A DNA stretch of 63,748 nt, the filler included, from Octopus bimaculoides (lineage: Eukaryota), in NCBI RefSeq assembly GCF_001194135.2. It is 6 parts of 5 records of this genome, joined end to end, with 100 filler letters (N's around TTAATTAATTAA, not from the genome) between each part and the next. Parts side by side here need not be neighbours in the genome. Positions count along the whole stretch, not along the records: positions 36,322 to 44,250 come from NW_026396319.1; 5 more parts are not named here. One strand, 5' to 3'. The notes beneath the pieces are model-generated. The model was given only the letters and a program-made list of their open reading frames with translations. It made no database searches and was not told the origin of the DNA. Both the position numbers and the translations under genes were made by a program. This document shows, piece by piece, positions 36,336 through 38,986 of the stretch. The stretch's first letter is position 1. Each line of letters opens with the position of its first letter.

Positions 36336-38986
36336 GATCTGACAGTTTCTGATAAAGGCAGACATATTCATCTCCCTCAAAGTTTGGGAGATGAAGAACT
36401 GTTAAGGATTAATCGTCTGGTTATTACTGAAAATAACCTGATTGCGAGATGGGACTGGCGGAGTAAAAACATTAAGATATTCACATTGGATGGTCATCTT
36501 TTGGATTCAATCAAATTCAATGTTTATGGAATTCTTAAAATGTGTCGATGGCAGTCAAACACACTGGTCATTACGAATTTGGATCGTTATGATGATGATA
36601 AATGCCAACTGTTGACATTAAAAGTGGAATTTCCATTGTCGTTGGTAATTTACCAAACGAGAAATAAATATGAATGTGTGGCTTCTTTATCAAACAATCA
36701 AATGGTTTTTAGTAAAAGGAGAGATGGAAGTCATTTGTATTTTGTTGATATGGATGAGATACATTCGAGTGTGAAAGAAATAAAACAAATAGACATACCT
36801 GAACCATTATTAACAAGAAAAGAAGATGGAAAATATGATGATTACATCCAGGATATCAAAGTTACTGCTGAAGATGTCACCATTGTCTTCAACAGAAGAT
36901 TCATCATTTTCTTCAACAGTGATGGTCAATATTTACATTCAGTTAGACACTACATGGGGTATGGTGTTGATGATGATGACAGAATGACAATTGATGACAG
37001 TTATTTGTATGTTTATATTAGGTGGAATAAATATTTAGGTATGACTAGATATAAAAACATTTTCTGTTTGACCCAGAATGGGGAATACAAGGGAATATTC
37101 TTAAATAAAAGACTTTATAAAGATGAAGTAGTTTTCGCCAGTATGAACTGTAAAGGTCCAAGGTTTGTTGGAAGCCTTGGGAAATGGGAAAGAGAGAATG
37201 TATTGTATGTTGAAGGGTTGTTTATGGTGAATCGAGAAAGGTTCCCGGTTGCTCGTTTACAAACAGACGAATTTGCTGTTCAAGTAAAAGATTTTGATAT
37301 TTCTGATGAAGGAAAGACAGTTGTGTGTGAAAAAGCCAATAATGGAAATGTTAAAATATTTAATAAAGACGGGGAGCTGCTATGTCACAGAAATGTGGCA
37401 AGTTTAGTTGGTGGTGTGTGTTTTACACAAGGAAAACACATAATGGCCACGGTTCCCAAAAGAAAAGAAATATTTCAACTGAATAGAAAAGATTTGAAGA
37501 CATCTAAAGCTTGGACAAGTCTCATCCCTTATGGTGTAATATGGAGAAAAGTGGGGGGNNNNNNNNNNNNNNNNNNNNNNNNNNNNNNNNNNNNNNNNNN
37601 NNNNNNNNNNNNNNNNNNNNNNNNNNNNNNNNNNNNNNNNNNNNNNNNNNNNNNNNNNNNATTTACTGGTGTCAACATATTGAATTGATTGAATGTCATT
37701 GCATAAAGATTGATGGGGACCAAGTGAAGGTTCTGGAATCTGTGTCTTTATTAAATCTTGATTCTGGTCTTTGTTTCCCTTCCATTACATCTCAGACGAA
37801 CAAAGAAATATTCAGTAATGAATTAATTAATAAATTGGAATACAGAGGAGGAGATGGAAGAAGAAGAGGTGAATCAGGTGAAATAATTGGTAAAGGTAGA
37901 TTAAAGGTGAGATGTGGTAATTACATAGCGGAGATTAATAATTCAGGAATTGATGAAATATCAGTGAGGAGACTTCCATATAGAACAGCAATGGTCCCTA
38001 TTTCCATTCCTGCATTTGAGGAACCTGTTAATTATGATTTTATGGACATTAGAGACTGGAACAGTAAACTAATTAAGTTAGATGAGAATGTGAGTGTGTT
38101 GATGTTTCGAGAAAGTGTCACATTAATCAGAACAACAACAACAACAACAGTGGACATACTTCAACATGAACAACAAGAAGAAGAACCACTGGACATTTGT
38201 CGGTGGACAGACGAATGTTTCATTGTCGCCTTTGGGAAGGAAATGAGGGTCTTCAACAGGGATCTCTGTTGTTTAAAAACCATCAGAACTGAGAAATACT
38301 ACAACAGGATTTATAAATACAACGACAATCAACTTGTGTGTGGTGGTCATTATATTAGAGACATAACTCAAGAAGAGAGAGACAAGAAATACCAAAGAAG
38401 AAGGTACAACAACAAGGATTACTATTATTGCAAAGACCCTGACATCTTTGACTCTTATTATGTGGATGTGGTTGATATGGAAGATGGAAAATGTAAAGAT
38501 GAAGTGTGTCATGGGAAGATGGGGCGATATGGAAGGTTGGAAGGAGATGCAGGGGTGGATGGTGTGGGGGTCACATCTTTTGGTGATGTTGTTGTTGTGA
38601 GGTGGGAGGATGGATTAGAGTTAGATGATTTCTGTTTTGTGGAATGGTTCAGGGAAAAGTCTTTGGTGAGGAGGATAAGAATAAGAGGAATATATATTAG
38701 TAAGGGATGTTATATTCCAAGACCTCGTCTCACCAAAATTGATGAATGTGTTTATATAGCAGATAGAGACAACAATATTTTCCAAATACCTCAACACGAT
38801 GAAGAGGAAACATCTGAAGATAATGAAATCCTGATATCTGAAGATAATCCAAAATATTTACTCCTCAGGTGGGATGATAATGAAGTCTTTGTAGTTCTTG
38901 GTTTGGATGTTTCAGAATATTCTTTCATGGTTTTTGGAATTATTCCTGGACATCAATCTTTTGCTTTCTTTCATTATGACAAATAA
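36336..38986 (+). CDS. Large terminal exon encoding ~850 aa of tandem beta-propeller-like (NHL/TolB-like) units; upstream exons not identified
   Basis: Acceptor ctttatatctacag|GAT at 36336 is in frame with the ORF. 36336-37558 and 37661-38986 are both stop-free, separated by 102 N; TAA at 38984-38986. Recurrent beta-strand blade motifs (IKIFTLDGHLL, IIFFNSDGQYL, VKIFNKDGELL, MRVFNRDLCCL, VYIADRDNN). Fold assignment is by pattern only. Confidence 0.85.

What the first reader, a model, noticed from the sequence alone, without database searches (positions are those of the whole stretch)
36336..38986. One intronless 2.65-kb exon encoding about three tandem, highly diverged beta-propeller-like units
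Seen: two stop-free frames totalling ~850 codons, flanked by an in-frame acceptor and a stop, in DNA where other exons are 70-213 bp. Blade-like motifs (IKIFTLDG, IIFFNSDG, VKIFNKDG, MRVFNRD) fall into about three blocks (~36336-37240, ~37240-37980, ~37980-38986). Established: in molluscs, TRIM-like proteins often end in a single NHL/TolB-like propeller encoded by a large last exon, and such genes form lineage-expanded, putatively immune families. Inference: this is a multi-propeller member of a cephalopod-expanded, uncharacterised recognition-protein family, possibly made by in-exon duplication or retroposition. This is the best candidate here for an undescribed system.
Basis: partly seen in the sequence, partly recalled or inferred. 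Interest (0 to 1): 0.72.

Follow-up and report, generated by a model that had tools for sequence, protein, structure and literature searches.

The report
Octopus giant multi-propeller NHL-like protein gene
This stretch is the last 853 codons of an intronless Octopus bimaculoides gene from an undescribed, octopod-only family of about 1,700-residue proteins made of roughly six tandem copies of the NHL-type beta-propeller that normally ends TRIM ubiquitin ligases; what the family does is not known.

Summary
The open reading frame is real. The two "stop-free frames" are a single ORF. Paralogue DNA and the RefSeq model XP_014788244.1 both read straight across the assembly gap, which hides about one base.

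The ORF runs open from the edge of the piece (36324) to TAA at 38984-38986, 853 codons. The "acceptor" at 36335/36336 lies inside conserved coding sequence. Intact relatives are intronless ORFs of about 5.0-5.4 kb (1,662-1,925 aa), so the window holds only the C-terminal half.

AlphaFold models are all-beta, and Foldseek matches only beta-propellers. Profile comparison finds about three units of 260-300 aa. Each is collinear with the C-terminal NHL propeller of a cuttlefish RING/B-box TRIM protein: U1 E 6e-9, U3 4e-5, U2 2e-4. That domain in turn matches solved TRIM2/3 NHL structures (E 2e-11). U1 and U3 are well supported; U2 is weak.

An exhaustive profile search of 1.84 billion proteins found the multi-unit family only in Octopus species and Argonauta. 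This copy belongs to a fast-evolving tandem-array subfamily (Ka/Ks 0.8-1.25, many broken copies). Conserved members are under purifying selection (Ka/Ks 0.39).

The exon boundary is wrong, and the immune or recognition role is untested.

The parts
36324..37558 (+). First part of the ORF: codons 1-411 plus two bases of codon 412. The frame is open to the edge of the piece, so the 5' end of the gene is not in the window.
   Evidence: Translation has no stop. It is 77-84% identical to O. vulgaris paralogues and 100% identical to RefSeq XP_014788244.1 from Met73, nt 36540.
37559..37660 (.). Assembly gap written as 102 N. By comparison with a paralogue it hides about 1 nt, the third base of Gly412.
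   Evidence: The flanks map to L001 12446-12564 and 12566-12685, one base apart. All homologues read WRKV(G/A)(G/N/R)IYWC across the junction.
37661..38986 (+). Second part of the ORF: codons 413-853 and the TAA stop at 38984-38986.
   Evidence: Translation. 28 homologues, E down to 1.8e-233. The paralogues end at the same ...AFF(H/Y)(Y/F)DK stop.
36378..37232 (+). Unit U1 (aa 19-303): an NHL-like propeller unit, the best supported of the three. It is variable among array paralogues.
   Evidence: hhalign against the C-terminal NHL domain of the Sepia TRIM protein P0077: probability 95.9, E 6.4e-9, 209 collinear columns. AF2 pLDDT is 50-84 and all strands. Ka/Ks against L001 is 1.07. Mean column entropy is 0.3-0.95 bit.
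37233..38104 (+). Unit U2 (aa 304-560, spanning the gap): a degenerate or divergent unit. Its first ~70 residues are blade-like (VKIFNKDG). The rest is poorly modelled and includes a Gly/Arg-rich, indel-variable loop at aa ~473-486 (nt 37841-37882). It is almost invariant among array paralogues.
   Evidence: hhalign against P0077: E 2.2e-4 over only 69 columns. U1 against U2: E 2.6e-5. pLDDT is below 50 for aa ~398-522 in both models. Entropy is about 0.1 bit. Ka/Ks is 0.57.
38105..38983 (+). Unit U3 (aa 561-853; the confidently modelled domain starts at about aa 542, nt 38048): a C-terminal propeller of about six four-stranded blades. Its second half (aa 641-820) is hypervariable among paralogues.
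   Evidence: In the AF2 model of aa 413-853, residues 130-441 have pLDDT 75-95 and 25 strands in groups of four. Foldseek against PDB returns only propellers, best E 2.1e-7. hhalign against P0077: E 4.4e-5 over 161 columns. Against the unit upstream of the window: E 4.3e-8. Entropy reaches 1.2 bit.
38132..38149 (+). (ACA)6 microsatellite inside the ORF, encoding TTTTTT at the start of U3. Its length differs among paralogues (3-6 Thr).
38987..39255 (+). 3' flank shared with the paralogues, probably 3' UTR. It contains an ATTAAA at 39001-39006. Homology to the paralogue loci ends here.
   Evidence: 70-71% identity to the sequence just after the stop codons of L001 and L003. Further downstream only dispersed repeats match. 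ATTAAA position.

Best explanation
Positions 36324-38986 are the 3' half of a single-exon protein-coding gene of Octopus bimaculoides (RefSeq LOC106882172).

What the family looks like (shown): it is found only in octopods. Complete members are intronless ORFs of 5.0-5.4 kb encoding 1,660-1,925 residues. They have an N-terminal region of about 170 residues with no recognisable domain. This is followed by about six tandem units of 255-300 residues. Each unit derives from the six-bladed NHL-type beta-propeller that ends cephalopod TRIM (RING/B-box/coiled-coil) proteins. The window holds the last three units. U1 and U3 are clear propellers. U2 is degenerate or strongly diverged.

Origin (inferred): the architecture most likely arose by serial duplication of the propeller inside one exon, with loss of the RING/B-box part.

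This copy (shown): it belongs to a young subfamily that lies in a tandem array (about 16 kb spacing in O. vulgaris) next to C2H2 zinc-finger genes. The subfamily's proteins evolve quickly in U1 and the second half of U3 around a nearly invariant centre. Many of its copies are broken.

Mechanism (inferred, not shown): an intracellular, multivalent binding scaffold. The faces of the individual propellers bind protein or RNA ligands, as in TRIM-NHL proteins. The variable outer units would set specificity and the conserved centre would give a common function. One subfamily whose gene models carry an N-terminal ankyrin + RING module hints at a link to ubiquitin ligation.
For: One ORF:
- Gap flanks are one base apart in the paralogue, and all homologues are continuous across the gap.

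Coding:
- 853 codons are open, against 27-75 stops in the other frames.
- Suppose half of the divergence from L001 had accumulated neutrally. Then 8 stops would be expected, and P(no stop) = 0.0004.

Fold:
- AF2 models are all-beta, with pLDDT up to 95 in U3.
- Foldseek against PDB: 906 and 435 hits at E<=1e-3. All those listed are beta-propellers. The top hits for the long model are tandem-propeller proteins such as Utp21 and DDB1.

NHL link:
- hmmsearch of the family profile against 1.84e9 proteins hits Sepia pharaonis P0077 at E 6.5e-8.
- P0077 carries RING, B-box and NHL domains by Pfam.
- P0077's C-terminus matches solved TRIM2/TRIM3 NHL domains at E 2e-11 and Brat at 4e-5.
- hhalign of the family against P0077: probability 94.8, E 5.4e-8, window aa 26-261 aligned to P0077 404-621.
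- All units are collinear with that domain.

Units:
- Self-comparison gives a period of about 265-285 aa.

Full-length, intronless genes:
- L005 (5,025 nt, 1,674 aa) and L006 (5,043 nt, 1,680 aa) are intact single ORFs. They are orthologous between O. vulgaris and O. bimaculoides, with Ka/Ks 0.39.
- L001-L004 are the same 5.4-kb gene with 1-2 frame breaks.

Distribution:
- 35 hits in the exhaustive search. All multi-unit members are from Octopus species or Argonauta hians.

Array and fast evolution:
- The P0035 and P0034 genes lie 16 kb apart on the same strand.
- Ka/Ks is 0.83-0.87 for the window against L001/L003, and 1.25 for L001 against L003. Within the latter pair it is 1.39 and 1.74 in the variable parts and 0.64 in the centre.
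- Entropy profile across 35 close paralogues.
Against: - No Pfam family, NHL included, reaches threshold on the window protein or on full-length relatives. The best is NHL at 18.5 bits against a cut-off of 20 in P0070. The profile search of PDB sequences finds TRIM71 NHL only at E about 1. The NHL assignment therefore rests on one intermediate sequence.
- The AF2 models are of moderate quality (mean pLDDT 59.6 and 67.0). The alignments are shallow and come from one genus. I could not inspect coordinates, so the blade count of six is read from strand patterns only.
- Foldseek's top hits are WD40 propellers with TM-scores of 0.2-0.55.
- U2 is weakly supported as a propeller.
- The 5' half of this particular copy is outside the piece, so whether it is complete is unknown.
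- No expression data were available.
- Ka/Ks near 1 is also what relaxed constraint would give.
- Function and ligand are entirely inferred.
Confidence: 0.75

Rival explanations
1. This particular copy is a dead or dying array member, that is, a 5'-truncated or otherwise broken pseudogene. On this reading its long ORF survives only because the duplication or a gene conversion was recent.
For: - The four array-type loci examined each carry one or two frame breaks: L001 465+1304 aa, L003 772+1080, L002 323+315+1173, and L004 broken near its 3' end.
- Ka/Ks of the window copy against its closest relatives is 0.83-0.87.
- The RefSeq model starts at an internal Met.
- The upstream half is not in the piece.
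Against: - 853 codons carry no stop and no frameshift, although the copy differs from the nearest known relative at 272 nucleotide positions. Simulated neutral decay gives P(no stop) of 0.0004 or less.
- U2 shows Ka/Ks 0.57 with a Ks similar to the other units. That indicates purifying selection rather than homogenisation alone.
Confidence: 0.25
2. The window encodes two propellers (U1 and U3) joined by a conserved beta-rich connector of a different kind, not three propeller units.
For: - Both AF2 models give pLDDT below 50 for aa ~398-522.
- U2 matches the TRIM NHL domain over only 69 columns, at E 2.2e-4. U2 against U3 shows nothing (E 0.57).
- U2 behaves differently in evolution. It is nearly invariant among paralogues.
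Against: - The first part of U2 is clearly blade-like and in register with U1 (E 2.6e-5) and with P0077.
- Its length of 257 aa fits the period of the other units.
- The model is still mostly strands there.
Confidence: 0.25
3. The units are WD40-type or another class of propeller, and the resemblance to NHL is convergent.
For: - The Foldseek top hits are WD40 proteins.
- The profile search gives weak multi-stretch hits to bacterial STAND-WD40 proteins, E 4.5e-5 to 1.6e-4.
Against: - WD40 proteins dominate the PDB, and the TM-scores are low.
- No Pfam WD40 hit on any family member.
- The only domain-length, collinear sequence match is to an NHL propeller.
- The unit length of about 270 aa fits six NHL blades rather than seven WD40 blades.
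Confidence: 0.07
4. The ORF belongs to a transposable element or an endogenous virus. On this reading it is multi-copy and intronless because it is mobile.
For: - Dozens of copies, an intronless ORF of about 5 kb, many of them decayed.
- Dispersed repeats and a LINE reverse-transcriptase fragment lie nearby.
Against: - No reverse transcriptase, integrase, transposase, capsid or other element domain in any member.
- The copies sit in a local tandem array with only ~1.4 kb of 5' and ~0.3 kb of 3' shared flank.
- Conserved single-copy orthologues occupy large chromosomes in three species, with Ka/Ks 0.39.
- The viral structure library returns only generic propellers.
- The reverse-transcriptase fragment is on the other strand, 1.2 kb away, and unrelated.
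Confidence: 0.03

Closest known systems
TRIM-NHL proteins (TRIM2, TRIM3, TRIM71/LIN-41, Brat, Thin). The nearest actual sequence is the Sepia (Acanthosepion) pharaonis RING/B-box/NHL protein CAE1315789.1 (P0077).
   Same: Each unit is collinear with, and detectably homologous to, the C-terminal six-bladed NHL propeller. The propeller is probably the ligand-binding part. The coding sequence sits in a large exon.
   Different: The octopod family has no RING, B-box or recognisable coiled coil. It has about six propeller units in a row instead of one. It falls below the Pfam NHL threshold. It is restricted to octopods and locally amplified.
Multi-propeller scaffolds such as DDB1, CPSF160 and SF3B3 (three WD40-like propellers), Utp21/WDR36 and EML proteins (tandem WD40).
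   Same: These are the best Foldseek matches to the 781-residue model, E about 1e-13. They share the idea of several propellers in one chain acting as a binding platform.
   Different: No sequence relationship. They belong to a different propeller class with seven blades. They are ancient and single-copy. TM-scores are only 0.16-0.29.
Lineage-expanded TRIM-like families of molluscs (from my own knowledge, not tested here), and the tandem gene-family expansions of octopus such as C2H2 zinc fingers.
   Same: Lineage-specific tandem amplification, fast protein evolution, and many partial copies. The array sits next to C2H2-ZNF genes. One gene model is a ZNF chimera (P0032).
   Different: Those families keep the one-propeller TRIM architecture or are unrelated folds. 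I found no description of a six-propeller form.

Membership tests
NHL-repeat six-bladed beta-propeller (Pfam PF01436, as in TRIM2/3/71 and Brat) | Match to the Pfam NHL repeat model above its gathering score | tested here: not met
   No NHL hit on either window peptide, even at E<=10. None on five long paralogues. The best in the family is P0070 at 18.5 bits against a cut-off of 20.
NHL-repeat six-bladed beta-propeller (Pfam PF01436, as in TRIM2/3/71 and Brat) | Domain-length profile homology to a bona fide NHL propeller | tested here: met
   Family profile against P0077: hmmsearch E 6.5e-8 with the whole 1.84e9-protein library as background. hhalign probability 94.8-95.9, E 5e-8 to 6e-9, 209 collinear columns. 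P0077 has Pfam NHL at 29.1 bits and matches TRIM2/3 NHL crystal structures at E 2e-11. The direct profile search against PDB reaches only E about 1 for TRIM71.
NHL-repeat six-bladed beta-propeller (Pfam PF01436, as in TRIM2/3/71 and Brat) | Closed propeller of six four-stranded blades | tested here: inconclusive
   The models are all-beta and Foldseek returns propellers only. U3 shows 25 strands in about six groups of four. Coordinates could not be inspected, pLDDT is moderate, and TM-scores are 0.55 or lower.
TRIM / RBCC E3 ligases | N-terminal RING, B-box and coiled coil | tested here: not met
   No RING or B-box in full-length members P0040, P0051, P0055, P0066-P0070. The N-terminal ~170 aa shows no similarity to the RBCC part of P0077. 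Only the P0052/P0101 models carry an ankyrin + C3HC4_3 RING module, which is not the TRIM type. The N-terminus of the window's own copy is outside the piece.
WD40 repeat proteins | Pfam WD40 repeats or a seven-bladed WD propeller | tested here: not met
   No WD40 hit. The only links are structural matches at low TM-score and short repeated hits to bacterial WD40 proteins at E about 1e-4.
Transposable element or viral gene | An element-type enzyme or structural domain, terminal repeats, dispersed insertion | tested here: not met
   No such domain. The copies lie in a tandem array with short shared flanks. The viral fold library gives generic propellers only. Terminal repeats and target-site duplications were not searched systematically.

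The most novel reading that the evidence does not exclude
Octopods evolved a new class of intracellular recognition proteins by stringing six TRIM-type NHL propellers into one chain. The tandem-array subfamily diversifies its outer propellers (U1 and the second half of U3, with Ka/Ks above 1 between neighbouring copies) around an invariant core. On this reading it is a germline-encoded repertoire against viruses, transposons or RNAs, possibly feeding an ankyrin-RING ubiquitin ligase.
Probability: 0.2. Interest if true: 0.75.

Novelty: new variant of a known kind. Interest (0 to 1): 0.5.

Why it matters
NHL propellers are known as single C-terminal ligand-binding domains (RNA or protein) of TRIM ligases. 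As far as I could find, a chain of about six of them has not been described. Here it occurs in an octopod-only family with two kinds of member: conserved single-copy genes, and a rapidly turning-over tandem array.

It gives a concrete, structurally interpretable example of how cephalopod-specific genes arise: a domain is duplicated inside one exon and the gene is then amplified. It is also a candidate for a diversified binding repertoire in an animal group whose innate immunity is poorly known.

On a practical level, database annotations of the family are fragmentary. Dozens of partial 'hypothetical proteins' and chimeric models could be corrected using the six-unit, single-exon architecture.

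Tried and rejected
- Pfam on both window peptides, and sequence search of PDB: nothing significant. The weak tRNA_Me_trans, DUF6201 and DUF4934 hits are below threshold and were ignored.
- BLASTP of the joined peptide against itself found no repeats. BLASTP of the two halves gave one weak match, E 8e-4. Only HMM-HMM comparison resolved the units.
- MAFFT twice aligned the N-terminal unit onto U3 (A1 and A2). Those alignments were discarded in favour of A3-A6.
I used the identical RefSeq model P0038 and the window's second half instead.
- The first profile job failed because the profile exceeded 1,200 positions. It was rerun with A5. A5 carried some ankyrin/RING columns from P0052, which produced irrelevant hits (P0076, P0078, P0081).
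- P0038 is not on record in the contig index, so the sequence upstream of the piece could not be fetched.
- The N-terminal region against the TRIM coiled coil: no similarity.
- The bacterial promoter/terminator scan and ARAGORN are uninformative for this eukaryotic DNA.
- Four literature searches found nothing on the family.
- The viral fold library returned only generic propellers.
- The retroposition idea could be neither supported nor excluded. No poly(A) tail or target-site duplication is visible, but the whole family, conserved members included, is intronless.
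Full report
**1. The observation**

The piece (36322-44250) opens in the middle of a reading frame. From 36324 the frame runs without a stop to the last read base before the assembly gap (37558). After the gap a frame runs from 37661 to 38983 and ends at TAA 38984-38986. The other two forward frames of the same stretch are littered with stops. The ORF is therefore real and far beyond chance.

**2. The gap**

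- The written gap is 102 N, and with that length the two frames differ.
- Every homologue reads straight across the junction as ...PYGVIWRKV(G/A)(G/N/R)IYWC(Q/V)H.... So does P0038, which is RefSeq XP_014788244.1, 'uncharacterized protein LOC106882172 [Octopus bimaculoides]'. It is 100% identical to the window from Met73.
- At the DNA level the two flanks map to positions of the O. vulgaris paralogue L001 that are exactly one base apart...AAAGTGGCGCG-T-ATTTACTGG....
- One missing base completes the Gly codon (GGN) and joins the frames.

The two 'stop-free frames' are one ORF of 853 codons. The gap length in the assembly is an artefact.

**3. The 5' end**

The CAG|G at 36335/36336 is not an exon boundary. 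The four codons before it (LYLQ) and the sequence further upstream in the paralogues (...VFSRNI(C/S)(V/L)SEMLSSTLYLQDLTVSDK...) are conserved coding sequence. The window's frame is open to the first base of the piece, so the ORF is cut off by the piece.

**4. The family**

Two single-sequence searches and one profile search of the 5.8-billion-protein set gave 17, 28 and 53 hits. All were from Octopus vulgaris, O. sinensis or O. bimaculoides, and none had a Pfam domain.

An exhaustive HMMER profile search of 1.84 billion representatives gave only 35 hits at E<=1e-3. The long members are:
- P0067, 1,712 aa
- P0068/P0095/P0096, 1,674-1,680 aa. These are three-species orthologues in one 90%-identity cluster.
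- P0070/P0099, 1,662-1,674 aa
- Argonauta hians P0069/P0097, 1,913-1,925 aa

Genomic loci show that the whole coding sequence is one exon. L005 (O. vulgaris, 5,025 nt) and L006 (O. bimaculoides, 5,043 nt) are intact ORFs. L001-L004 are the same gene of about 5.4 kb with one or two frame breaks. The P0035 and P0034 genes lie 16 kb apart on the same strand of OX597841.1, the 29.19-Mb contig that carries most O. vulgaris hits. This is a tandem array, with C2H2 zinc-finger genes alongside.

The window shares with these loci only the ORF and about 270 bp of 3' flank. Everything further downstream matches only as dispersed repeats.

**5. Fold**

AlphaFold2 on P0038 (window aa 73-853, 27-row alignment) gave mean pLDDT 59.6 and pTM 0.57, and is almost entirely beta-strand. 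Foldseek against PDB returned 906 matches at E<=1e-3. The top matches (E about 1e-13) were all tandem-propeller proteins: axonemal and SSU-processome WD proteins, the Utp21 tandem WD domain, DDB1, Apaf-1 and AIP1.

A second model of window aa 413-853 gave pLDDT 67 and pTM 0.68. Residues 130-441 reach pLDDT 75-95 and hold 25 strands in groups of four. Foldseek again returned propellers only (best E 2e-7, TM up to 0.55). The viral library gave only generic propellers.

Both models are poor for aa ~398-522.

**6. Units and their origin**

HMM-HMM self-comparison of the family alignment shows a period of about 265-285 aa. In P0034 numbering the anchors are at 199, 464, 749 and 1010. In window numbering the units start at about aa 19, 304 and 561. 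Unit-to-unit E-values are 4e-8 (upstream unit against U3) and 3e-5 (U1 against U2). Counting the upstream part of the paralogues gives about six units after an N-terminal region of about 170 residues.

The only non-octopod sequences in the exhaustive search with a domain-length match were P0077 and P0083.
- P0077 is from Sepia pharaonis (E 6.5e-8). Pfam shows it to be RING + B-box + NHL.
- P0083 is a 282-aa NHL-repeat protein (E 3e-4).
- hhalign of the family against P0077 gives probability 94.8%, E 5.4e-8, aligning window aa 26-261 to P0077 404-621.
- Unit by unit against the P0077 C-terminus: U1 6.4e-9 (209 columns), the upstream unit 1.7e-5, U3 4.4e-5 (161 columns), U2 2.2e-4 (69 columns). 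All are collinear.
- P0077's C-terminus matches solved NHL propellers of TRIM2/TRIM3 (E 2e-11), Thin, TRIM71 and Brat.

Direct tests are weaker. No Pfam NHL hit reaches threshold, and the family profile reaches TRIM71 in PDB only at E about 1. I therefore treat the units as divergent NHL-type propellers, established through an intermediate sequence. They are not members of Pfam NHL by its own rule.

Full-length members have no RING or B-box. Their N-terminal region shows no similarity to the RBCC part of P0077.

**7. Selection**

| Comparison | Ka/Ks | Other figures |
|---|---|---|
| Conserved orthologue pair, L005 vs L006 | 0.39 | Ks 0.099, 91.6% aa identity, both ORFs intact |
| Window vs L001 / L003 | 0.87 / 0.83 | Ks about 0.13 |
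| Older paralogue pairs | 0.5-0.7 | |
| Neighbouring copies, L001 vs L003 | 1.25 | |
| Window vs L001, by unit | U1 1.07, U2 0.57, U3 0.87 | Ks similar across units |
| L001 vs L003, window aa 1-300 | 1.39 | |
| L001 vs L003, aa 301-640 | 0.64 | |
| L001 vs L003, aa 641-853 | 1.74 | small counts, suggestive only |

Among 35 close paralogues, aa 301-640 is almost invariant (about 0.1 bit per column). Positions 1-300 and 641-820 vary at 0.3-1.2 bit.

Despite the high Ka/Ks, the window ORF cannot be a long-dead sequence. I placed half of its 272 differences from L001 at random, keeping the observed substitution spectrum. This gives 8 expected stops and P(no stop) = 0.0004.

**8. Interpretation**

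Shown:
- One ORF.
- It is the C-terminal half of a single-exon gene.
- The fold is all-beta and propeller-like.
- About three units are homologous to the TRIM-type NHL propeller.
- The multi-unit family is restricted to octopods, with conserved members and an unstable tandem array.

Inferred:
- Six blades per unit.
- Origin by serial in-exon duplication of a TRIM propeller, with loss of the RBCC part.
- An intracellular, multivalent binding function, with the variable outer units setting specificity.

Ankyrin + RING (zf-C3HC4_3) modules head the P0052/P0101 gene models and also occur as separate small proteins (P0076, P0078, P0081). They hint at a link to ubiquitin ligation, but the models may be chimeras.

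Rivals: this copy is a decaying pseudogene; U2 is not a propeller; the propellers are not of the NHL class; the ORF comes from a mobile element. They are listed with their evidence in the Rival explanations section.

**9. Novelty**

The gene is already annotated as an uncharacterised LOC, and the fold class is known. The architecture of about six NHL-like propellers in one intronless ORF appears undescribed, as does the octopod-specific family with its array subfamily. Four literature searches found nothing. I class it as a new variant of a known kind, of moderate interest.

Noticed in passing
window 40155-41360, minus strand (assembly gap 40568-41070 inside): Fragment of a LINE-type retroelement. 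The stretch 41073-41360(-) matches Pfam RVT_1 (E 7e-13). The ORF continues after the gap to 40155 with no Pfam hit. It is unrelated to the propeller gene.
   Followed up: partly
window 39553-39976 and 43628-44140: Two dispersed repeats of roughly 150-500 bp (SINE-like). Each is present many times, on both strands, in all four O. vulgaris/O. sinensis loci fetched, at 72-87% identity. The family was not identified. ARAGORN finds no tRNA here.
   Followed up: partly
window 39172-39417, 39556-39573, 43792-43906; gap 39418-39544: Long TA/CA/GT microsatellites flank a second assembly gap (127 N). These are probably what broke the assembly here.
   Followed up: no
window 38132-38149: (ACA)6 coding microsatellite giving a poly-Thr run whose length differs among paralogues (TTT to TTTTTT). 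In Argonauta the same spot carries a long Pro/Gln/Tyr-rich repeat insert.
   Followed up: partly
L001 8517-13915; L002 10001-15397; L003 7590-13087; L004 10001-15142: Array-type copies in the HiFi-based O. vulgaris assembly and in O. sinensis are split by 1-2 frame breaks. Database 'proteins' of 240-1,470 aa are therefore fragments or spliced-over models of one ORF of about 1,800 codons. P0015, P0007, P0016, P0030 and P0032 are visibly chimeric or internally deleted models.
   Followed up: partly
P0052 / P0101 (O. vulgaris LOC118761994 models); P0076, P0078, P0081: One subfamily's gene models begin with ankyrin repeats plus a C3HC4_3 RING finger in place of the usual N-terminal region. The same module also exists as separate proteins of 226-331 aa. 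It is not resolved whether this is a real fusion or an annotation chimera.
   Followed up: partly
window aa 301-640 (nt 37224-38344) compared with aa 1-300 and 641-820: There is a sharp contrast among 35 close paralogues. The centre is almost invariant and both flanks are highly variable. Ks is similar across the regions between the window and L001. This could reflect selection on the centre, gene conversion, or both.
   Followed up: partly
L001 22690-23604 minus strand; P0032: C2H2 zinc-finger genes sit next to the propeller-gene array in O. vulgaris, and one O. sinensis model fuses the two. The array seems embedded in, or adjacent to, the octopus ZNF expansion.
   Followed up: no
P0062 (O. 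bimaculoides A0A0L8GPW0, 162 aa): UniProt names this family fragment 'Sema domain-containing protein'. Pfam finds no Sema domain in it. This is probably an automatic mislabel triggered by the propeller-like sequence.
   Followed up: partly
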